The notes beneath the pieces were generated by a model, which saw only the letters and a program-made list of their open reading frames with translations, searched no databases and was not told the DNA's origin. Of a stretch of DNA of 64,000 bases, positions 6,201-64,000 are shown in pieces (positions within the stretch are counted from its first letter, which is position 1; the number at the start of each line of letters is the position of its first letter). The DNA is from Iphione sp. A-MEVVRFRX5. Its lineage: Eukaryota. The stretch is from NCBI GenBank assembly GCA_976226885.1, contig OZ320320.1, forward strand, positions 42,718,001-42,782,000, read 5' to 3'. Made by a program: the position numbers and the translations under genes.

Positions 6201-6619
6201 GCCTTCATCAGACAACAAGATGATTATTTAACAGTGTTTCTGCAGTGTAATTCAAACTATGCTCTTCACAGGTAAAATAGTTGGTTGGCAATTATTAACT
6301 GTGGATCACATCAAGTTCAATAACCCAACAAGCAAAGAATAATATCTTGAATTTAACATTATCAAGTCTCTTTTCAATCTGATTCATAAAGTGATTGTTA
6401 AGGCCAAGAGCTACAGATGGCATAAAAATAAGTTCAAAGCCTGACAATTTCTGTCAAAAATTATATTTAGCCTTAAATATATATATATATATATTGTTTA
6501 AATCTTCATATCTATGATCATCAAGATAACAGCAAACAAATGTGTATTTTCAGTTCTATTATCCCTACAACATGCTTCCTAAGTAAGGACACTGACCTCT
6601 GATAAAGTTAGCTGCCAAC

Positions 6620-6956
6620 CAAATAGGACGGAGGGAGAGAGAGGGGAGGGAGCAGGAGAGGGAGGGAGACACAGAAAGAGATGTAGGGAGAGAGGGATGG
6701 AGAGAGAGGGGAAGAGAGAGGAAGGGAGCAAAAAAGAAAGGGAGAAAGAGGGAGGGAGAGAGAGAAATAGAGAGGGAGAGAGGGAGGGAGGGACGGAAAG
6801 AGAGAGGGAAGGAGAAAGAGGGAGCAAGNNNNNNNNNNNNNNNNNNNNNNNNNNNNNNNNNNNNNNNNNNNNNNNNNNNNNNNNNNNNNNNNNNNNNNNN
6901 NNNNNNNNNNNNNNNNNNNNNNNNNNNNNNNNNNNNNNNNNNNNNNNNNNNNNNNN
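6620..6956 (+). repeat. GA-rich low-complexity tract running into a 128-N assembly gap (6829-6956)
   Basis: Direct inspection. Confidence 0.9.
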
Positions 6957-21388: not shown

Positions 21389-21565
21389 CATCATCAAACC
21401 CATCGTCGTTACTGGACATAAAATACAGGGGGCGCTCATAGGCCATAGTCTGGCCGAAGACCGCATCAGTCTCCATGCGCGTGTACAGTGGGGAGGTTCG
21501 TAACTTCCGGCCTGTTGCCAAGGCAACTGTCTGGGTATCCCAGAAGGGAATTTTCGCCAAATAAC
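21389..21565 (-). CDS. PDPR: PDPR alternative exon 11A
   Basis: cttctcag|GT ... GAT G|gtaact; 177 nt, phase 1 to 1; YLAKIPFWDTQTVALATGRKLRTSPLYTRMETDAVFGQTMAYERPLYFMSSNDDGFDD. Confidence 0.88.
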
Positions 21566-21739
21566 CTGAGAAGAAACATTTTACAGCGTGTTAAATAATT
21601 TACATTTAAAACTAATGTAATTATATTTCTCTGGTACAAGTCAAATATGAGGGCATTTCGTTGGAGGTAGAGCGCTTGGCCTAACGTGGATTTTTCCGAA
21701 CTTCACCAAACAATGTTCAGTGATTGCGACCAATGAGGG

Positions 21740-21945
21740 GAGGGTACAGGGAAGCAAGAGAAGAGACTGATGGGAGAGGGAAAAGGTAGCGAGTGGTGGA
21801 GGGAGACCGAGATGGAGACACAGAGAGGGAGAGAGAAAGAGAGAGTGGGAGAGGGAGAGGGAGGAGAGAGGGGGGAGACAAAGAGGGGGAGATAGAGGGA
21901 GAAAGACAGAGATAGAGAGAAACACGGGGAGGAGGAGAAAGAGTC
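21740..21945 (+). repeat. GA-rich low-complexity tract
   Basis: Direct inspection. Confidence 0.85.
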
Positions 21946-22516
21946 TCTTCTTTACCTCTATAATGTCATTATTTTCTTTGAAGGACAGCATTGGAAATGG
22001 TTATGAGGATAGAAAGGTAGAGATAAGGGACAGAGAGGGGTAATAAGAAAGGCTGGATAGTGGGACATGGCTCTTATTGTGTGTAAACAATATAAACATT
22101 TGGGAACATTACTTTAAGAGTTTGCTTTAGGATGTTCGGCGAAATGCTATTCCTCTCAACAAAGATCATTTACAGCATGTGACATGTATACATATAAAGT
22201 TCTGCCGCGTTTATATAACCAGCATGTCAATACTTGATGGCAGATAGAATACTGAACAGATTCTAAATTTACTTTTCAACAAAGGATTTTACGATTACAA
22301 AAGTTATACCACTGGAGTGACTTTTACTTGAACCGTTTCGATGTGAAGCATTTAATCTCATCTTATTAGAAGTAAACTACCGGTATCACTTGTTAAACAT
22401 GATCCCAATGTACATATAATGTACGTGTATTAATCATCCCAGGATAAATAAAAGATATTAAAAAATCTAATGGCAAAGATGGAAAATCTCTCCAGGAATA
22501 GAAAAATATTCGTTAA

Positions 22517-23565
22517 CCCTATACTGTCCATACATAGGAAAATTGTGTATTTTTGCACGATGGGAAGATTGCAGAAGCCCCATATTAACCCTTGCATTCA
22601 TTTAGTTCATATTTAGTGAAAATATATAGGAATCCTCTGGCCAACTTATGGTCATATCAAATTCTGGAATTAATATTCAGTAACCATGGAGAGGCAGTCA
22701 CATGATCTGTAAGAACATCAACTTTGATCATGTTTACATGTTTTTAGACATATTAATACAAATATGTCCTAAATCTTTAAATAACTAATGAATTATTATT
22801 GTATTATGAAAAAAATCCTTTGTAACACAAAAGGGTTTATCCCTACAGCTTGTGAGAAGTGTTCAAGGAATCATTAGAGGGAACAATAGTGACAGTATAG
22901 CATTTGGTGTGCTATAACCTTTTTTAATTAGGATATAGAATTTCATATAATTATTACATATTATTTCTGATTATAATATACAACCTTTATGTAATACAGG
23001 CTCTGTTTCACTAATTTCTGCCATCAAAATGAGAAAATTCATAGCTGGTTTTTATTAGGAACCAGTACTTTTTAACCAATTATGATTATATCTATTGTTG
23101 ATATATCCCATGATGCATCAAATCTGCATCAGTGATGTTAATGCATATGGTGATGCTCTTTTTTTGCATAAAATATGTACATTACAGGTCAGGACAGAAT
23201 GTGTTTCAGATCACATACAGAGACAAATTAGGTATCAAAAGACTGGAATTCACCTCCTGAACACTTTGTTAATTGAACATTTTCTTCTATGAGCAATATT
23301 TTTCAATGTTAATCTGCCAGTAATGTAAATTAGGGTAAATTATATGTAAATTTTCTGAATTATATTTCACTTTCAATCCTGCCATGTTGTCATGGTAACC
23401 AAATAAATTAAGTACAATTATTTTCAAAATAACCTGTAATTCAAGGGCTTTCACTTGATATACAACATTATAAAGTATCTCTTGTATTAAACCCTACAGG
23501 TAAACAAGATAAATGAAACTACAGTTCCCCATTCCAAAACATCATTTTTCATGGACGGTATAGGG
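22517..23565. mobile_element. Non-autonomous piggyBac-like element (MITE) between exons 10B and 11A
   Basis: TTAA on both flanks (22513-22516, 23566-23569); 15-bp TIR CCCTATACTGTCCAT / ATGGACGGTATAGGG (1 mismatch); AT-rich non-coding interior. Confidence 0.75.
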
Positions 23566-24217
23566 TTAAGACATGATGAACAATCAAAAGAGATGGCTTA
23601 TCATAAAACATATGCTGAAAGCTACGTATGCACGCAAAAGATGGCTTAGTATTAATGTTGTAGATTAAAGGTTAGTATAAGGCAAACAGGTCTGAACCCT
23701 ATGTATGCACAGTCAATACCACACAAAGATCAGCCCAAAGTGAGACTAACTCCCCTAATTTTGGTCTGCCCACTCTGATGGTCATTTCGTAACGGACAAA
23801 CGATCTACTTAAGTTGATTCAATAACAGTTGGTATAGACATGTTTTGTTAGTCTAAGTCTGTCTGTAGTGTGGTATTTCAATGTGCATACGGAAAAGTGG
23901 CAATATTATATGGCAAAAAGCAACCGCTGGCGTTTGATAAACAAGCATAAAATAAACATAAATCAAAGAACTTTGATCAACAAGTACTTAGTCCAGTCTT
24001 GTATTGTTTGGGATACGACAATGGTTCTTGTCAGTGTGTTTCTGGAAATGCGTGTGCATTGTACGTTAATGTGCAACAGCTAGCTAATAAATACGATAAG
24101 TATAAGTCTTTTCCTATAACTCTCTGCTAAACAACTACTCTCGACCAGTTAGTGTTGAGCAATCACGTCGACATTTAAAGAATTGTTTTATGACACATTG
24201 CTGGAAGCCATACGTAC

Positions 24218-24410
24218 CAAGTGTTTCTGTGACTCTTTCTCGCAGAAAGTTCCGGTTGTTATGCATATCGACAAACCTACGTACATCGACGGACCACAGA
24301 TTGAGGCTAGGCTCTCCCTCGACTATCCAATTGCTCAACTGCTTGCCAACTGCTGGGCCATACGTGATGCCTAAAGACGACATACCGGCCCCTACGTAAT
24401 AGTTGTCCAC
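24218..24410 (-). CDS. PDPR: PDPR alternative exon 10B
   Basis: cgaacag|GTG ... CTT G|gtacgt; 193 nt, phase 0 to 1; VDNYYVGAGMSSLGITYGPAVGKQLSNWIVEGEPSLNLWSVDVRRFVDMHNNRNFLRERVTETL. Confidence 0.9.
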
Positions 24411-25905
24411 CTGTTCGTGCGTTATCAACAGTGCAGACAGGGAGAGCAAAACAAAAAGATATTTATCAAGAACTATAGAGGACATATTAACTGTACTGGC
24501 GAGCATTCGATGAAAAACGTTGTATGCCTGGTGCGTACTGTTTTTCTGGGTACAGTGCAACCATGCACCACGCAACTGACCCATTGCTGCATAGAAATCT
24601 TGGACACTGTCCAGTTTCAGCTGTCCTTCACTACTGGTAACATTTAAACATTTCCCAGCTAGAGACCTTTGCTGTACAATGAAAAGTGATGAATAAACGT
24701 GCAGGGTTATTTGTGGCACCAGTTATCCAAGACAAGTGAAACATGAACAATGTCAAAACCTCCCAGCAATAGGTCAATTGTTTGCACGTGAAGGTTAGCT
24801 GTGTACCTTGGTGTGTTTAGCCCTGACAGATTCGGAGCTGTATTTTGTAGTCTGTGCAAAGTCTGTAGTCTGTACTAAAAATTAGAGGCTGCCGGTTAGG
24901 ATAAACATTCAAAGCGAGGAAAAATACTACTACGGTAGACTCCCTCTCATAAAACCACCGATTGATTTTTTGTGTTTTTTCTCCCTCAAAGTGGTTCTGT
25001 TTTAGGGATGGACTCATGACGGGCGGGGGTGGGGGTGGGGGTGGGGGAGTGATTCACACAAAAAAGACGTCTCTTCAGAAATGGTCTCAATGAAGGGGTG
25101 GTGTTTATCACGAGGGGTTCGCCTTAAGGCGAAAGTCTACAACACAAAGTTAAAAGTAGTCTCGATCCCTACAACAAACCTGTTATAACCGACTATCCCT
25201 GGAAGCCTGCCTTTTACTCGACAAGGCCAACAGCTCGGCTCTTATACTGTGTTTGTGGTAGAGACTGACAATTAACGAGCTCAAATCAAGCGCTCGCAAA
25301 AAGGCGGTGAAGCCGTGAAGCCTGGAATAATGCAGGCGCGGCTACAGCCAATGCCAACAACCAAGCTTGAAAAGGTAGAACCAAGGCAACAACAGTGCAG
25401 TCAATGTTGAAAACATCGTAAGGATTTTTGAAAGGTGTATTGGCAGATGCACCGATGAGTTCAAAAGGGCATATTTTTAGGCATTCTCAACATGCTCCCA
25501 GAATGGATGCTGTGGTTGGGTTTATGGTACGGTCATCCAGATAACAAGGACTTCAACACTACTGCACTGCAATGCTCTGGCATGGTGGAACTCGTTAATA
25601 AATGATACGGCTCCCTGCCGAAACACCACCATACACAGTTCCTTAGCAGGACCACCACAAAAAAACAAAACAGGAGATGATTAACAAAGCACAATACATG
25701 TAGTCCCTCGTGGAGCTGCGAAATGAATGAGGGATACCGCCAAAATACCCCGCAGTTTATGCGTTGTGGGAAGATTTACATATAAAGAGGATGCTATAAT
25801 TGTGGATGGGCGGCTGCTGTAAGCCTAGCAGTTGGCAGTGTGGCTATAATTTCTGTAAAGAGTGAAGGTCAACTTAAAGTAGGTTGAAGCCTTATCATTA
25901 CGTAC

Positions 25906-26104
25906 CAAGTGACTCAGTCACTCGCTCACACAGAAACTTCCGGTTATTATGCATGTCAACAAAGCGGCGTACATCTGCCCACAGTAGATTTGCCGACATT
26001 GTTGTTTCCCCACCCACAATCCAATCAGCAAGGCAGCGGGCCAGCCCGGGACCCTGTCCCACGCCGCTGGAACACATGCCAGCTGCCATGAAGTAGTTAG
26101 GGAC
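25906..26104 (-). CDS. PDPR: PDPR alternative exon 10A
   Basis: cctaacag|GTC ... CTT G|gtacgt; 199 nt, phase 0 to 1; VPNYFMAAGMCSSGVGQGPGLARCLADWIVGGETTMSANLLWADVRRFVDMHNNRKFLCERVTESL. Confidence 0.87.
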
Positions 26105-26799
26105 CTGTTAGGTAGAGAGCAAGACTAGGTAATCATCAATCATAACCAATCATTATGTCTTTACATAATAAAATGGGAGAATGCTCATCTTTAACCTTCT
26201 TGAATATTGCCACTACAGCATTAAATATGATATACTAGGTGAATTACTTGAATCGCTTTCAATGAGTAGGTTACATTAACTCCCCAGTGAATTATGAACT
26301 TGACTTTATGATATTAGATGGAGAAATAGGAATTCTACTGAGACAGGTTGCAGAGCAATGACCTACATTTGTATTCAATACTCGAAGCTTTTGATGTACA
26401 GAGAACTGTGCAGAGGCACACAAACGGAACAGATCAGATGAAGAGCTAGCTAAGGACAATTAACCACCACTGCTCCACATACTCAAAAGGGCAATGTCAT
26501 AGTTCATTGGTAAGTTCATACATAACCTACGACCTTTATTAATTCATACATCAACACCAGGTGGGAACCTGACACTTAAAAGCAACATGCCCATTAAAGT
26601 CAGCAGGGCATCAACTACATGCTGCCCTTCAAATTAAACAACTTGAAGGTGTAAGTATCACTCTACAAGTCCCTTTTCATAGTTTCATGAGTGGCATACC
26701 CAAGTTGGACGGTTAAGAGATAGACTAGCTGAACATAGTTAAGCTAGAAGTCCAAAATTAAGCATATACTGATGCTGTCAACCTCAATGTCACTGTATC

Positions 26800-27560
26800 C
26801 ACCACAGCTCAAATCCACGGCTGAAAACTAGCTTTCTGTGCTGATGCCGGACAGCTGTTTAAAGAAAAAAAAATGCCTTAGAGATGCATAACCTCTTTTG
26901 TCTGCCTTGCTTAGGTGGCAACAGAGACTGCAGAATGAAGATGCCTAAAGGACGAAAAAGGTGATCCTCTTGATGAGAAAGAGACTCAAGAGCCAAAGTC
27001 CAATTGATATACTCTTGAGGACCAGAAATGACATACCGGTACTGTAATGGCCACTATGTGGCTGACTCGTGCCGCCTCCGGCACGAGGTATGTTGATTCC
27101 ATAAGCCCTTCTGGACAGTTCAGTTGACACCATTACCTCGTATTGCATGTTTCAGTAATAAACCTAGTTCATCTTCTTGAGTTTTGTCTCTTTTACGAAG
27201 CGGGCGCTACTATACAATTGGGCTTCTGAGGGAAAGGTAGTAGTTTAACTTGGAATGCTTAAGGGTTTTCATGAAGACAACCTGAATAGAACCATATCCT
27301 CAAGATCATGGATGTTGGAGATCTCTATATTATGGGTAGTCTGAATCCAACTACTGGTGGCCAACATAGAAACAATATACTTGAACATCAGTTTCTTGAG
27401 GGTTAAAGCCTGTAAACAATGTCAAGGCCCTGAGAATGTCCGCACTAGAGAGAAATCCTAAATACGGTAAACTCTGCCTGAGAAGCCTGAAAGTGTGAGG
27501 ATGCTTCCTAAAGGCTGAACCTTCATAACAGGACAGTTGGCAGATGAGGAGATTACAGCT
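26800..27560 (-). mobile_element. Third DIRS relic (tyrosine recombinase fragment) in intron 9
   Basis: Minus-strand frames give FRKHPHTFRLL, LTLKKL...NIEISNIHDL, VSVAT*ARQTKEVM and LSGISTE, collinear with the recombinase at 40430-41340. Confidence 0.65.
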
Positions 27561-28995
27561 TCTGTTGAATTTTTATAGAATATTCATAGAAAAAAAGCAA
27601 ACACCATGTGTCAACAAAGCCCCAGGGCCCCTCTGCAATGCCGAAAGCCATAACAAAGTGAATAGATACAGTAGAGGAAAGTACGAAAATACATGAGAGA
27701 AATGAATGTGGTGTGAGCTGTCAAGACATCATCGGACAACTGAAAGTAGGTGTGGGCCATAACTGTGTGCTGCGGGCTGCCCAAGGCTGCCACCTGGTGC
27801 TCAAGGTATGAATTACAGTCTGATTTTTTCTCATCTATGGACCTGAACCCTGTAAGGGCGGCTAATGGCTGAAATCATTCCTAGGCTAGTGGGGAGGGGG
27901 GGCCGTGATTGCTGAAAGCATTCCCAGGCTAAGGCGGTTAATACTTCAAGATGTATCTCAAAGACTGATCTGACATGTCATTTCAACTGGAAAGATCCAC
28001 AATATATGAGCGATTATTGTTTTAATAACTCCATATCATTAATATTTTACACAAAAATATCCTGAAACGCAAGTCCTACGTTTACCTTGCCACAGCTATG
28101 GGTTACACTTCTGACAGATTCAACGTAATTACACACTTCTATGCTACGAATCCAACCTAAATATGCACATCAATTCCATGTATGATGCAAAGAGTAATAT
28201 TTGAAAGGTCTCTGAAAATTAAACTCCTCATTAAGTACTTTTTTGAAGACAGTAGAAAAGTTTTATGAAACCAAGCTAGGAATTCACCAATCTTTGGTCT
28301 TTCCGCTATTGAGTCGCACGAAGCATGGTACATGAAGGTACATTGCTGGTTACTGAAGAACTTGGCCTTAATCAAGGGTTGGTTCCACTGTCCCCTAAGT
28401 GGGTTGGCTTCAATGTATTAAAGATTATGTTTTAAAAATTGTCCTATTTTTTAATATTTTTAAAAATCAAAACTTTGTTGCCAAAGTGAAGCATAGAATT
28501 GGCAGTCTGAAGTGATTTCAGCTGCTTCAATGAAGCTGTGATTTTTTTTAATTCATTCTTTTTATTCAGTTGAACAGATACACAACATCAGCCAAGTAGG
28601 CTAGCTTTTAGTTGATTACCAGTGACTTTGTTACATAGAGCAGCAATATTAATCAGATGACATAAGATATTATGAGAGTTTATCATGACTACTACGAAAG
28701 ATATCAATCCAACCTGCTAGGGATGGGTGCATACAGATATAGTAACACTCCTTAATTGGACCACTGGACTCAGATCCATACTGTGTGTCAAATTAATGCA
28801 TGTCTTTGGCTATTTAAAAATTAATAGATTACACAAACCTACTCCTGAAATATTATCTTGACTTTGTAAGGCTGTTGCAGACAGGTGTCTAGCTGAGATA
28901 TAGGTGTAGGTGGTTTCACTGCAGATAGTCCATTCAGTAATTATTTTCCAAAGCAGAGTAGAGTAGATCCATAGAATGTGAAGAAAAAGATTCAG

Positions 28996-29079
28996 TGACA
29001 GTTTGCTTGGGGAATATGCGTGGTAAACTGCGTGGTAAACAGAACAGTTTACCACGCATACTCCCCAAGCAAACTGTCA
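28996..29079. repeat. 35-bp inverted repeat (1 mismatch) with a 14-nt loop
   Basis: Arms at 28996-29030 and 29045-29079. Confidence 0.9.
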
Positions 29080-29188
29080 GAAATGTGAAGTTCCATATCA
29101 AAACAGCCCAGGTAATATTGAGCTGCACATATTACGTTTGAGTTATATTTAGGAGTCACTGATGTATGGAAACAAAACCAAGACCCAC

Positions 29189-29313
29189 CTCAGGTGCCTC
29201 ACCAACGATGCACTTGCCATCAGGAGTAAAACTTTCAGGGCCATTCAGCAACTGTCGCACTTCAGCATGCTCTAGTGCTGGCACACGGTGCAGCAGTTGA
29301 TCAAGTAAGATGT
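29189..29313 (-). CDS. PDPR: PDPR exon 9
   Basis: ctttcag|AC ... GAG|gtgggt; 125 nt; ILLDQLLHRVPALEHAEVRQLLNGPESFTPDGKCIVGEAPE. Confidence 0.93.
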
Positions 29314-59329: not shown

Positions 59330-60500
59330 CTTCCCTCCGGGGAGCTCGATGGAGTCGATGAAACTCCGGGCGGAGGTAGCTGAACCGGGGGAGTCCGGTG
59401 AAGGAGCAGAGTTCGCCGTGGGTTGGCCGGACTCCGCCCAGTTCCGCCCGGAGTCCGCTCTGACTCGTGAACCGCCAAAAGAAAGAAGCAGTTGTTCCCC
59501 GGAGAGCGAGGATACCCCACATGGAAGGGGAGTCGAACCAGAAGAGGAGGAAGAAGGGCCAACGCCGGCCCTGGGCTCTGCTGCCCGCGCCCCGGCCGAC
59601 GGTGACGTAGGAAGTAATGACCCACACCTCGAAGGAGGTGCCGAAGAGGAGGAGGCGGAGGCGGCCACTCTGCCCCCCTTGTGGACAGGATTCGTGGAAG
59701 GGCTACGCTCTGCGCTCCGGCCTGAGAGCAGTCGGAAGGGTCAGGTGAAACCGGACACCTACGATAGCAGCACCCGCTCCGGGATTTTCTTCAGCACTTC
59801 GAGCTAGTGGCGCTCGCCAATCACTGGACGGAGGCAGATAAGGCCCTACAGCTGGGGATCATGCTCCGGAAGTCAGCACGAGCGGTCCTGCGAAGTACCG
59901 GAGTGGATGTGGAGCAGGCGGGGGCGTACCAACAGCTAGTGAGTGCCCTCATGGAAAACGCTTCCAATCCAAGCACCAGACGGATGCCTACATCCAACAG
60001 TTAAAGGGGCGGCAGCAGGAGAAGTCTGAAGCGCTGGCGGACCTGGCTGATGAGATAGAGCGTCTGGTCCAACTAGCTTACCCGGAGGCAAGGGGCACGT
60101 GGAAGGATCGGATGTGCCGGGAGTACTATGTGGGAGCCCTCGCCAACGAGAAGGTCCGGAAGTGGGTAACCCAGGCCCGGGTGTCCACCTTCCGTGAGGC
60201 CCTTTCGGCCTCGCAGGTTGCGGAGTCCTATTACCAGAACAAGACGGATCAGGGAGGTCCCAAGAAGGTGCATAAGCTGGAAGCGGTGGGGCAAGTTCCC
60301 ACCCCCCCTGCTACAGCGCCGAAGAAGGAAGCTCCACCCGGCGGATGGGAGCGCTTGGAACAGCTGTTGCAGCAGTTGTTGGCAGGACAGCCAGAGGGTA
60401 ATAAGGAGAACCGGCGACCGGCAAGTAAGAAATGCTTCAACTGCAGCAAGTTGGGGCACTTCAAGCGGAATTGTCCCCATCCCCCCAAGGAGCAACCGTT

Positions 60501-60545
60501 GGGAAACAGGGGAATGGCCGCCCCCCAACAGTAAGGGTGGCGGCC
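60501..60545 (+). promoter_or_regulatory. -1 programmed ribosomal frameshift signal (gag-pol)
   Basis: G GGA AAC in the gag frame, 8-nt spacer, stem GGCCGCC-C-CCC / GGG-T-GGCGGCC with an 8-nt loop; the -1 frame runs into the protease. Confidence 0.8.
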
Positions 60546-63500
60546 GAGGAGAAGCATGGTGGTGAAGAGGGCGCACTGGATGAACATCTACGGAAGTTGC
60601 GCCTGGAGGCGGGTGAAGAGGTGGTTCTGGAGGGAGAACAGAATCGAGGGATGAACATCGTGCTCCCTAGCGAGGTGGCCGGGCTCCGGATGCCATGGCT
60701 GGTAGACACGGGAGCCTCCCTCACGTTGCTTTCGGAAGAAGTAGCCGACAACTTGGCTCTGGACGAGCTAGAGCCTGCCGCGGGGCGGATTCTGTGTGCG
60801 GATGGGCAGCCCCTCCGAGTGAGGGGTCGGACCCGAGTGCAAGTGCAATTTGCCGGTGTGGAGTTGGAGGTCAAGGCCTGAGTGGCCCGGATCGATTGTC
60901 CTGCGATACTGGGATTGGACATGTTACGCCGCTGGAGGGCGCAGGTGGACAAGGAGGGGACCGCACTTCGGGTGCGGGTCCCCGAGGACGACAGAACGGA
61001 AGGATGTTGGGCCGTACTGGTTGAAGATTATCAGCTGAATGGGCGGAGCGCGGTGCAAGCTCGCGTCCACTGGGAAGAGCTCGATAATGAAGATCAGCCA
61101 GTGTTGGTGGAGGCCTCCCCCGAGTAGGAGGGCCGCTCTGGTATGGTGCTGGCACGCACGGTGTGTCCGGCGGGCAGTCGGGATGGAGCGGTGGAGATCG
61201 CCAATGTGAGCACCTGGGGGCATCGCTTGCGACAAGGGACGGTCGTCGCGAGAGTCCAACTGGTTGACGGGGCGAGCGGATTGGAGCAGGGGGGGAGCGT
61301 CCAGGCTAGCGAAGAGCCCGGACTTGGGCCCGTGCTGCGAGGTCTGCTGGAGCAGTTGCCCGAGGAGCTGGACAAGTCGCAGAAGAGAGAAGTGGAGCGG
61401 ATGCTACGGAGGAACGCTGACTGTTTCCAGGAGGAAGGAGGGGCACTGGGTAGGACCGAGGTGGTTCAACATCGGATCGATACGCAGGGACACGGACCGA
61501 TTCGACAGAGGGTCCGACGCCTACCGCCGGCCAAGAAGGTCCTGGTGCAACAGGAGGTGGACAAGATGTTACGGCAAGGGGTGTTGGAACCCTCGACGAG
61601 CCCCTGGGCCTCCCCAGTGGTGTTAGTGCACAAGAAGGATCAGAGCTGGAGGTTCTGCATAGACTATCGGGCACTGAATGGAGTGACCAAGAAGGACGCC
61701 TATCCCCTACCCCGTATTGACGAGACGCTGGATGCCCTTCAAGGGGGGCGTTACTTCTCAGCAATTGACCTGGCTAGCGGTTACTGGCAGGTGGGGGTAC
61801 GGCCTGAAGACAAGGAAAAGATGGCGGTGTGCACACCTGGGGGGCTCTATCAATTCCGCATCAGGCCCTTCGGGTTGTGTAACGCGCCGTCTACCTTCGA
61901 GCGTCTCATGGAAGCCATTTTACAAGGACTGGTGGGCCATTCCTGCTTGGTTTACCTGGACGACGTGATCGTGATTGGCAGAACAGTGGAGGAGATGACC
62001 CGACGCCTGGAGGAGGTGTTTAGCAGGCTACGAGCGGCCGGCCTCAAGGTAAAACCTCAGAAGTGCCAGTTGTTTCAGAAGAAAGTGGCATATTTGGGAC
62101 ATCAAGTGTCTGCCGACGGGGTGGAACCGGATCCTGAGAAGATCGCGTCCGTGCAAGCTTGGCCAGTACCCCGTTGTATCACAGGGCTTCGGAGTTTCGT
62201 CGGCCTCTGCTCCTACTATCGTAGCTTCGTCGAGGGGTTCGCCGCGGTAGCCGCCCCCTTACATGAGCTGTTGGAGAAGGGCAAGGAGTACCGTTGGACC
62301 CCGGACTGTCAGCAGGCCTTTGTTACCTTGAAGGCAAGGCTGGTCTCCTCCCCAGAGTTAGCCTACCCCCGGCCGGAAGGACAGATGACATTGGACACAG
62401 ACGCCTCTGCCGCCGGCCTAGGGGCGGTACTCTCGCAGGAGCAAGACGGGAGGGAACGTGTGTTGGCCTACGCGAGTCGGAGTCTTTCTCGCCCGGAGCG
62501 AAATTATTGTGTGACCCGAAAGGAGCTATTGGCAGTGGTGTTCGGTCTACGTAAGTTCCGCTCATACGTGGGGGGCCAAAGGCTGGTGATCCGTACAGAC
62601 CATAGTTCGTTGTGCTGGCTATGCCACTAGAAGGCTCCAGAAGGCCAGCTCGCACGCTGGTTGGAAGAGGTACACTGCTACGATCTGGAGATCATCCACC
62701 AACCGGGCAAGAAACATGGTAATGCGGATGGCCTCTCGAGGCAGAAATGCCTACAGTGTGGGAGAGAGCCTATGAAGACGGAAGAACTGGGGCAGGTGGC
62801 GGCTGTGTCCATGGAGCCGGCCGAAGAGGACACTCTGAGCCATGCCCAGAAACAGGATGGCAGGGCGGGGCCCGTACTGCGGGCTCTCGAGTCAGGGGAA
62901 ACGATTCCCCCACTAGGCAGGGGAGATGAACGAGAGGAACGTTGGTTGAAAGGAGAGACACCTCGGTTGGAGATAAAGGGGGGCCTCTTGTGTCATCGAT
63001 GGGAGACCGAGGACGGAGCCACCTGGTATCAGGCCTATGTACCCGAGGGATATCGATTCCCCGTCTGGCGGGAGGTCCACGCCGGCGCCCTGGGGGGGCA
63101 CCTTGGCCCCGAGAAGACCGAAGGGGCCCTACGATGCAAGTACTGTTGGCCTGGGTTGGCCCGTGATGTCCAGCGGTGGGGGCGGGCGTGCTTCCCTTGC
63201 CAGAGGAGACAAGACCCCGCCCGGCGGCATCGGGCCCCATTGCAGCTTCGGGTAGCCCCCGCTCCCTGGGAGTTCGTCGCAATGGACGTGTGTGGCCCAT
63301 TTCCCAAGACGGTGAGGGGAAACAAGTATATCCTTGTGGTGGCGGACCATTTCACCAAGTGGACCGAGGCTTTCCCCGCGAAGGAAGTAACAGCGACGGC
63401 CACAGCTCAGATTTTGCTACGAGAAGTCATCTGCCGGTTCGGCCCCCCGCGGGTTCTTCACTCGGATCAAGGAAGAAACTTCGAGGCAGCAGTTGTGCAG

Positions 63501-64000
63501 GAACTGCTATAGCTTTTCGGGATTCAGCGGTCTCGAACTACCCCCTACCACCCCCAGAGCGACGGAGTGGTGGAGAGGTTTAATAGCACCCTCCTTGGCA
63601 TGTTGGCCAAAGTGGTACGCGAAGACCAGTCTGACTGGGACGAGAAAATTCCGTATGTCCTCGCTGCCTACCGAGCCACACCCCACCGTACGACAGGGTT
63701 CTCTCCAAACTGGCTTACCCTGCAACGAGAGACAACCCTACCTATTGAGTTGATGGTAGGGTCCCAGGAAGAAGAACGGCGGTCGGTGACTGAATACGTG
63801 GAAGAGGTCCACCACCGTTTTGTAGAAGCACATCGGACGGTACGGCGGCATCTACAGAAGGCCGCTGAGCGTTAGAAGGACTGGTACGATAGGAAGGTCA
63901 GGCCCCAGGAGTTTGACGTCCGGGACCGGGTGTGGCTCTACAGTCCAATCAAGAAGAAAGGACGCTCCCTTAAACTGCAAAGTCGTTGGCAAGGGTCTTG

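What the first reader, a model, noticed from the sequence alone, without database searches (positions are those of the whole stretch)
24218..26104. Exon 10A/10B: an old duplicate pair with a purifying-selection pattern and a divergent FAD-proximal loop
Seen: in the last 23 codons, 20 residues are identical, 10 codons differ synonymously and only 3 differ non-synonymously. The N-terminal halves diverge (AAGMCSSGVGQGPGLARCL versus GAGMSSLGITYGPAVGKQL, plus a 2-aa insertion in 10A). Both share the donor CTT G|gtacgta and TTGCTCTC in the pyrimidine tract. Including both exons shifts the frame. Inference: both copies are translated and differ mainly around the flavin and substrate pocket.
Basis: partly seen in the sequence, partly recalled or inferred. 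Interest (0 to 1): 0.76.

Follow-up and report, generated by a model that had tools for sequence, protein, structure and literature searches.

The report
Two interchangeable copies of exon 10
A worm gene for a PDPR-like mitochondrial flavoprotein carries two old, intact, mutually exclusive copies of one exon (three in some relatives), so it can probably make protein variants that differ beside the flavin site; I could not check their use in mRNA.

Summary
On the minus strand, exon 10A (26104-25906, 199 nt) and exon 10B (24410-24218, 193 nt) are homologous: 58% amino-acid identity, BLASTP E 2e-26. Both have AG/GT borders and a length of 1 mod 3.

Including both exons gives a stop 34 codons into 10B. 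The same A and B exons, with the same lengths and phase, lie in tandem in three related contigs; two of these carry a third copy. Five more distant relatives have one copy.

Synonymous sites are saturated, and dN/dS is about 0.01-0.12 for both exons between species. A tree with separate duplications in each species is rejected (AU p 0.0002). So this is an old mutually exclusive exon pair, and both copies are kept as coding sequence. 10B resembles the single-copy exon of the more distant relatives; 10A is the derived form.

The exon covers the last strand-loop-helix of the FAD domain and the start of FAO_M. It includes the position that aligns with active-site Lys348 of sarcosine oxidase.

Earlier notes of this scan describe similar clusters at exons 2 and 11 of this gene. 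This is a new member of a known kind.

The parts
29189..29313 (-). Exon 9 (constitutive, upstream neighbour). It ends on a full codon (..GCA CCT GAG) before GTGGGT.
   Evidence: Sequence read. tblastn finds orthologous exon 9 in L002-L009.
25906..26104 (-). Exon 10A, 199 nt (66 codons + 1 nt). Derived 'A-type' version: Cys at position 11, GPG motif, 2-aa insert.
   Evidence: A-type orthologues: L001 400-598, L002 8164-8356, L003 8836-9028.
24218..24410 (-). Exon 10B, 193 nt (64 codons + 1 nt). 'B-type' version, closer to the single exon of other animals. Its acceptor has few pyrimidines.
   Evidence: B-type orthologues: L001 1547-1739, L002 10061-10253, L003 9986-10178.
24411..25905 (-). Intron between 10A and 10B (1495 nt). 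Too long for steric exclusion. GT..AG borders, not of the U12 type.
21389..21565 (-). Exon 11A, first of the downstream exon-11 versions. It starts in phase 1 and completes the codon opened by the last G of exon 10A or 10B.
25899..25911 (-). Donor 13-mer CACTTG|GTACGTA of exon 10A, identical to that of 10B at 24211-24223.
   Evidence: only these 2 matches in the window, 0.06 expected.
24211..24223 (-). Donor 13-mer CACTTG|GTACGTA of exon 10B.
26115..26122 (-). TTGCTCTC, 10 nt upstream of the 10A acceptor. The same octamer lies 31 nt upstream of the 10B acceptor (24442-24449).
   Evidence: 4 matches in the window, two of them here. Not present upstream of the orthologous exons.
24570..24785 (-). 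Long hairpin in the 10A-10B intron that folds better on the transcript strand, about 160 nt upstream of the 10B acceptor. A role in exon choice is possible but not shown.
   Evidence: MFE -81.9 kcal/mol, z -6.55 on the transcript strand; -58.0, z -2.47 on the other strand. 65 Watson-Crick and 13 G-U pairs. No counterpart in L001.

Best explanation
Exons 10A and 10B are a mutually exclusive pair made by an old tandem duplication of one exon of a PDPR-like mitochondrial flavoprotein gene (DAO + FAO_M + GCV_T architecture).

Each mature mRNA should carry exactly one of them. Either one keeps the frame from exon 9 to exon 11. Both together, or neither, shift the frame; both together gives a stop inside the second copy. 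Such transcripts would be unproductive and probably removed by nonsense-mediated decay.

The two products differ in the last strand-loop-helix of the FAD-binding domain and in the linker to the FAO_M domain. They are nearly the same in the first FAO_M helix. 10B keeps the form found in relatives that have a single exon 10. 10A is a lineage-specific derived form: Cys instead of Asn/Ser after the Gly-Met, Gly-Pro-Gly, and loss or displacement of a conserved Trp in the linker.

Shown: the anatomy, the frame rule, conservation and selection in other species. Inferred: actual one-of-two splicing, decay of double-inclusion transcripts, and an effect on the flavin environment.
For: - Homology of the two exons: E 2e-26. 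Pfam FAO_M: 5e-06 for 10A and 7e-12 for 10B. Both match the end of DAO, profile positions 327-353 of 353.
- Borders and lengths: AG/GT at every copy, lengths of 193, 196 or 199 nt, all 1 mod 3, in the window and in L001, L002 and L003.
- Every downstream variant read one base out of frame has a stop inside it, at codon 1 to 34.
- The related loci are true orthologues. They show the order exon 9, the exon 10 copies, then exon 11; L002 and L003 also hold exon 12. Flanking exons are 82-92% identical at the protein level.
- Selection: pS is 0.71-0.89 (saturated) and pN 0.20-0.25 for A-A and B-B orthologue pairs. ML dN/dS is 0.007-0.12. In 20000 random placements of the same number of base changes, none kept an open frame with the observed amino-acid identity.
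- Age: the A copies group together in the free ML tree. The tree with four within-species duplications is 37.9 lnL units worse, AU p 0.0002.
- Five more distant relatives have one copy upstream of exon 10; four of these loci also reach exon 11.
- 10B is 62-66% identical to those single exons; 10A is 52-57%.
- The closest full-length relatives carry the source name 'pyruvate dehydrogenase phosphatase regulatory subunit'.
Against:
- The taxa of the related contigs are unknown.
- Single-pair clade tests on 64 columns are weak (AU p 0.035-0.12). Only the joint test is decisive.
- No conserved intronic pairing element that could enforce the choice was found.
- The functional reading rests on homology to DMGDH and MSOX, not on a structure of this protein.
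Confidence: 0.78

Rival explanations
1. One of the two copies is a dead relic of the duplication (a pseudo-exon) that is never spliced into productive mRNA. On this reading 10B would be the relic because its acceptor has few pyrimidines, or 10A because it is the more divergent copy.
For: The 10B acceptor has a purine-rich stretch between TTGCTCTC and the AG. 10A departs more from the consensus of other animals. No RNA data could be obtained.
Against: Both copies stay open, keep AG/GT and keep their exact length class in three other lineages. This holds although synonymous sites are saturated. dN/dS is 0.007-0.12 for each type, and 0 of 20000 neutral placements reach the observed identity.
Confidence: 0.05
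2. Both exons code for protein, but the choice is not a regulated switch. One form is the default in all tissues. The other is a rare minor isoform, or serves mainly to lower expression through double-inclusion transcripts that are degraded.
For: Double inclusion creates a premature stop in every species examined. The two acceptors differ in strength. No conserved selector or docking element was found.
Against: Amino-acid-level selection on both copies over a long time argues that both proteins matter. A purely regulatory exon would not need conserved residues such as Cys11 in all four A copies.
Confidence: 0.12
3. The copies arose separately in each species, or are homogenised by gene conversion, so the pair is young rather than old.
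For: In the window the donor 13-mer and an intronic octamer are identical between A and B. That could reflect local conversion at the exon edges.
Against: A-B synonymous divergence is saturated (pS 0.83). The A copies of four loci group together, and the tree with separate duplications in each species is rejected (delta lnL 37.9, AU p 0.0002). A 2-aa insert is shared by the A copies of the window and L001.
Confidence: 0.03

Closest known systems
COQ-2 exons 6a/6e in nematodes, flatworms, annelids and molluscs (PMC7434440)
   Same: [quoted passage not shown] One copy resembles the sequence found across eukaryotes and the other is lineage-specific. The swap remodels the core of the protein near the cofactor or substrate site.
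   Different: The COQ-2 switch is backed by RNA-seq, exon deletions and a known output (ubiquinone versus rhodoquinone). Here there is no RNA evidence and no known biochemical output. This gene also carries further exon clusters (exons 2 and 11).
Mutually exclusive exon clusters controlled by competing RNA pairings (Dscam exon 6, 14-3-3 xi, MRP1 type; from my own knowledge, with mrp-1 mentioned in PMC7434440)
   Same: Tandem homologous exons of like length between two constitutive exons. Relatives have a cluster of three copies.
   Different: I found no conserved docking or selector sequence. The one strong strand-specific hairpin (24570-24785) is not shared with L001. Here the reading frame alone forbids double inclusion.
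PDPR / DMGDH / SARDH family (DAO + FAO_M + GCV_T flavoproteins)
   Same: The exon matches the end of Pfam DAO and the start of FAO_M. It aligns to DMGDH residues 361-405 of 5l46. The nearest full-length relatives are named PDPR by their sources.
   Different: I found no paper that links mutually exclusive exons with PDPR. The loop motif here is Gly-Pro-Gly/Ala, not the usual Ala-Gly-Gly.
Monomeric sarcosine oxidase active-site loop (Gly344-Lys348)
   Same: The gapless profile alignment puts MSOX 335-377 on exon positions 3-45. Lys348 is one of seven residues around the isoalloxazine ring and binds the substrate carboxylate (PMC12582975). It falls on exon position 16, inside the stretch where 10A and 10B differ.
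   Different: Neither version has Lys there (Gly in 10A, Thr in 10B). The match to MSOX is weak (E 0.024).

Membership tests
Mutually exclusive exons from tandem exon duplication | Adjacent exons in the same orientation that are homologous to each other | tested here: met
   58% amino-acid identity, E 2e-26. 1495 nt apart on the same strand.
Mutually exclusive exons from tandem exon duplication | Same splice phase and like length, so either copy alone keeps the frame | tested here: met
   199 and 193 nt. Both start in phase 0 and end with 1 extra base. They fit exon 9 (full codon) and exon 11A (phase 1).
Mutually exclusive exons from tandem exon duplication | Including both copies or neither breaks the frame | tested here: met
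   Both lengths are 1 mod 3. There is a stop at codon 34 of 10B when it is read after 10A. The same holds in L001-L003.
Mutually exclusive exons from tandem exon duplication | Each copy conserved as coding sequence in other species | tested here: met
   Orthologous A and B exons in L001, L002 and L003. dN/dS 0.007-0.12 with saturated dS. Old duplication.
Mutually exclusive exons from tandem exon duplication | Transcripts contain exactly one of the copies | not testable with these tools
No spliced protein of this lineage was among the hits.
PDPR-like flavoprotein (DAO + FAO_M + GCV_T) | Domain architecture DAO, FAO_M, GCV_T, GCV_T_C | tested here: met
   FAO_M and the end of DAO lie on the exon. 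tblastn of full-length relatives of 807-909 aa covers exons from 46.2 kb to 12.2 kb. DAO, GCV_T and GCV_T_C hits lie on neighbouring called genes of related loci.
PDPR-like flavoprotein (DAO + FAO_M + GCV_T) | Orthology to PDPR rather than to DMGDH or SARDH | tested here: inconclusive
   The best full-length relatives (44-52% identity) are named PDPR in spider, centipede and coral records. In the PDB only DMGDH is available for comparison. No family-wide tree was built.
PDPR-like flavoprotein (DAO + FAO_M + GCV_T) | Binds FAD and regulates the PDP catalytic subunit | not testable with these tools
   This is a biochemical property. Nothing in the sequence decides it.
RNA-pairing-controlled exon cluster (docking site and selector) | A conserved intronic element complementary to elements next to each variant | tested here: not met
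   Introns of the four loci share only short matches at chance level. Inverted repeats of 14-16 nt occur at about the number I estimate from chance. Strong hairpins differ in place between loci.

The most novel reading that the evidence does not exclude
Exon 10A/10B is one of three independent exon-choice modules (exon 2 with or without the flavin-anchoring histidine, exon 10, exon 11 in three versions) in one gene. Together they could give up to 12 isoforms here and more in relatives with three exon-10 copies. This would be a splice-coded set of flavoproteins in which the exon-10 choice retunes the flavin pocket. It might switch between a PDPR-type regulator and a catalytically competent amine dehydrogenase-like form, perhaps in response to oxygen supply as with COQ-2 in the same phyla.
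Probability: 0.12. Interest if true: 0.75.

Novelty: new member of a known kind. Interest (0 to 1): 0.45.

Why it matters
Mutually exclusive exons that swap part of a cofactor pocket are rare, and they are informative because they mark the parts of a protein that evolution found worth keeping in two versions. PDPR is a poorly understood flavoprotein. To my knowledge the role of its FAD is not established.

A lineage that keeps two or three versions of the segment beside the flavin, under strong selection, points to that segment as functionally important. It also offers natural variants for testing what the flavin does. Together with the clusters at exons 2 and 11, this gene is an unusually rich case of combinatorial splicing in a metabolic regulator. 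It is a clean test case for how exon choice is enforced when no competing RNA structure is evident.

Tried and rejected
- Word search with single exons: one hit for 10A and none for 10B. A profile of four exon copies was needed.
- Third copy in the window: tblastn with the extra copies of L002 and L003, then hmmsearch and nhmmer profiles over 21600-29200, found only 10A and 10B.
- Taxon of the related contigs: sample accessions are in no paper. There is no rRNA or other Rfam family in the window.
- Docking/selector search.
  - An 18-mer shared with L001 led to a large hairpin in the window, but L001 has none there. I therefore rejected it as a conserved element.
- Single-pair clade tests were underpowered. 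I replaced them with a joint constraint test.
Exons were searched one by one by reference.
- Structure prediction was not run. A single exon would fold poorly, and no model would contain FAD.
- An idea that Cys11 of 10A could be a covalent flavin attachment site was set aside. By homology this loop lies at the pyrimidine/ribityl side of the flavin, not at the 8-alpha methyl. That placement is from my own knowledge and was not tested.

Full report
**What is there**

The gene lies on the minus strand and runs from about 48.4 kb to 12.2 kb of the window (stop-free segments; tblastn with full-length relatives).
- Exon 9 is 29313..29189 and ends on a full codon.
- Exon 10A is 26104..25906 (199 nt) and exon 10B is 24410..24218 (193 nt).
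- Both exon-10 copies follow an AG, start on a full codon, and end with one extra G before GTACGTA.
- Exon 11A starts at 21565 in phase 1 and completes that codon.
- The introns are 3084 nt (exon 9 to 10A), 1495 nt (10A to 10B) and 2652 nt (10B to 11A).

**Check of the observation**

- The two translations are 37/64 identical, E 2e-26.
pS is 0.70 and pN 0.075 there. In the first 41 aligned codons pN is 0.40.
- 10A is 2 aa longer.
- The donor 13-mer CACTTGGTACGTA occurs only at these two places in 64 kb (0.06 expected).
- TTGCTCTC occurs four times in the window. Two of those sites lie 10 and 31 nt upstream of the two acceptors. That placement is unlikely by chance, but the octamer is absent from the orthologous introns.
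- Read after 10A, 10B meets TAG at codon 34.
- One note on tool output: tools using table 11 print M for a GTG or TTG first codon. That is an artefact, not a start codon.

**What the exon encodes**

- Pfam places residues 2-28 on the last 27 positions of DAO (PF01266). It places residues 31/37-65 on the first 34 positions of FAO_M (PF16350).
- A profile of 15 exon copies aligns to DMGDH 361-405 (5l46) and, without gaps, to monomeric sarcosine oxidase 335-377.
- That alignment puts MSOX Lys348 on exon position 16, which is Gly in 10A and Thr in 10B. Lys348 is one of the seven residues around the isoalloxazine ring and the partner of the substrate carboxylate (PMC12582975).
- The nearest full-length proteins (44-52% identity over the exons) are named pyruvate dehydrogenase phosphatase regulatory subunit in spider, centipede and coral records.
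- I therefore call the gene PDPR-like. Strict orthology was not tested.

**Relatives**

A profile search with four exon copies found 22 short ORFs on genomic contigs. I fetched ten of those contigs.
- L001 holds an A-type exon (400-598, 199 nt), a B-type exon (1547-1739, 193 nt) and exon 11A.
- L002 and L003 hold exon 9, three tandem exon-10 copies, exon 11 versions and exon 12. The middle exon-10 copy is A-type and the last is B-type.
- L009 holds exon 9 followed by a copy like the first one of L002.
- All ten copies in L001-L003 and the window are open, have AG/GT borders, and measure 193, 196 or 199 nt, all 1 mod 3.
- In each locus a second variant read one base out of frame has an internal stop.
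- L004-L007 have one copy between exons 9 and 11 and carry the usual Ala-Gly-Gly-Val-Gly-Lys motif. L008 has one copy after exon 9, but the contig ends before exon 11.
- The window itself has no third copy, by tblastn, hmmsearch and nhmmer.
- The organisms behind these contigs could not be named. Earlier notes of this scan take the window's genome for an annelid. I did not test that.

**Selection and age**

- For A-A and B-B pairs between loci, pS is 0.71-0.89 (saturated) and pN is 0.20-0.25.
- ML dN/dS is 0.007-0.12.
- I placed the observed number of base changes at random 20000 times per pair. No placement gave an open frame with the observed amino-acid identity.
- An unconstrained ML tree of 13 copies groups the four A-type copies together.
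- Forcing A and B to be sisters within each of the four loci costs 37.9 lnL units, and the AU test rejects it (p 0.0002).
- Tests of one pair at a time on 64 columns are weak (p 0.035-0.12).
- 10B is 62-66% identical to the single exons of the outgroup loci. 10A is 52-57% identical.
- So B keeps the ancestral form and A is derived.

Differences that hold across all four loci:
- Cys at position 11 in A, against Asn, Ser or Gly in B.
- Gly at position 20 in A, against mostly Ala in B.
- Ala at position 26 in A, against mostly Ser in B.
- The conserved Leu/Met-Trp of the linker is lost in three A copies and displaced by one residue in the window's 10A.
- Positions 13-17 vary in every copy, so they do not separate the two types.

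**How it most likely works**

One of the two exons is joined between exons 9 and 11. The frame rule makes every other outcome unproductive. That part is shown from sequence. Removal of such transcripts by nonsense-mediated decay is inferred from general knowledge.

What chooses between A and B is unknown.
- The intron is far too long for steric exclusion.
- The splice sites are ordinary GT-AG.
- I found no conserved complementary elements.
- The 10B acceptor has few pyrimidines next to the AG, while 10A has a good tract. This suggests that 10A is the default and 10B needs help. That is inference only.
- A 216-nt hairpin at 24570-24785 folds much better on the transcript strand (-81.9 kcal/mol, z -6.55) than on the other strand (-58.0, z -2.47). 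It could take part in the choice. L001 has no counterpart.

**Comparison with known systems**

- The closest analogue is the COQ-2 6a/6e pair of nematodes, flatworms, annelids and molluscs. There too, one copy is like the sequence found across eukaryotes and the other is lineage-specific and reshapes the enzyme core (PMC7434440).
- No paper in the library links mutually exclusive exons with PDPR.
- Earlier notes of this scan report similar clusters at exon 2 and exon 11 of this same gene.
- I saw both clusters in passing. The exon-2 versions appear with and without the histidine. Three exon-11 versions appear in the window, and two or three in L002, L003, L006 and L007.
- L006 and L007 have a single exon 10. 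The exon-11 cluster is therefore more widespread than the exon-10 cluster.

**Limits**

- The N run near 6.6-7.0 kb was left alone.
- No contig looked human.

**Verdict**

This is a real, old exon pair that fits every sequence-level criterion of mutual exclusion; both copies are kept under selection. It is a new member of a known kind. It is of moderate interest on its own and of more interest as one of three such clusters in one flavoprotein gene.

Noticed in passing
L002 6718-6910 and L003 7813-8008; L009 3371-3563: Related contigs carry a third, more divergent but intact copy of exon 10 between exon 9 and the A-type copy. The window has none, so the cluster size differs between lineages.
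   Followed up: partly
window 24570-24785 (minus strand): A 216-nt hairpin in the 10A-10B intron. MFE -81.9 kcal/mol, z -6.55 on the transcript strand; -58.0, z -2.47 on the other strand. 13 G-U pairs. Single copy in the window and absent from L001.
   Followed up: partly
window 28996-29079: A 35-nt inverted repeat, 97% complementary with a 14-nt loop, about 110 nt downstream of the exon 9 donor. It folds on both strands, so it is probably a foldback or MITE-like insertion. L002 has a strong two-strand hairpin in its intron 9 (about 6441-6660) as well.
   Followed up: partly
window 24411-24722 (minus strand): The reading frame of exon 10B stays open for 104 codons upstream of its acceptor, inside the intron. 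I found no homology for that stretch.
   Followed up: no
window about 44840-40430 and 34500-32110 (minus strand): Long ORF runs with reverse-transcriptase-like motifs (YIDD, YLDN) in the same orientation as the gene. They are retroelement insertions inside its large 5' introns and separate the two exon-2 versions.
   Followed up: no
L006 12043-12210 and 14614-14745; L007 10725-10898, 12491-12589, 13595-13708: Relatives with a single exon 10 still have two or three versions of exon 11. The exon-11 cluster is therefore more widespread than the exon-10 cluster.
   Followed up: partly
L010 2681-5418: A second contig from the same sample as L003, at different coverage, holds a compact related gene. 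It has one exon 10 of the B type (Gly-Pro-Ala-Val-Gly) and one exon 11 of the 11C type. It is either a paralogue with fixed exon choices or another organism.
   Followed up: no
window 25017-25048: A run of GGGGGT repeats on the plus strand inside the 10A-10B intron. It is G-quadruplex-prone on the DNA plus strand and C-rich in the transcript.
   Followed up: no
window 60001-64000: G+C rises to about 0.6, against about 0.4 elsewhere. This may be a CpG-rich promoter or another gene. There are no Rfam hits in the window.
   Followed up: no
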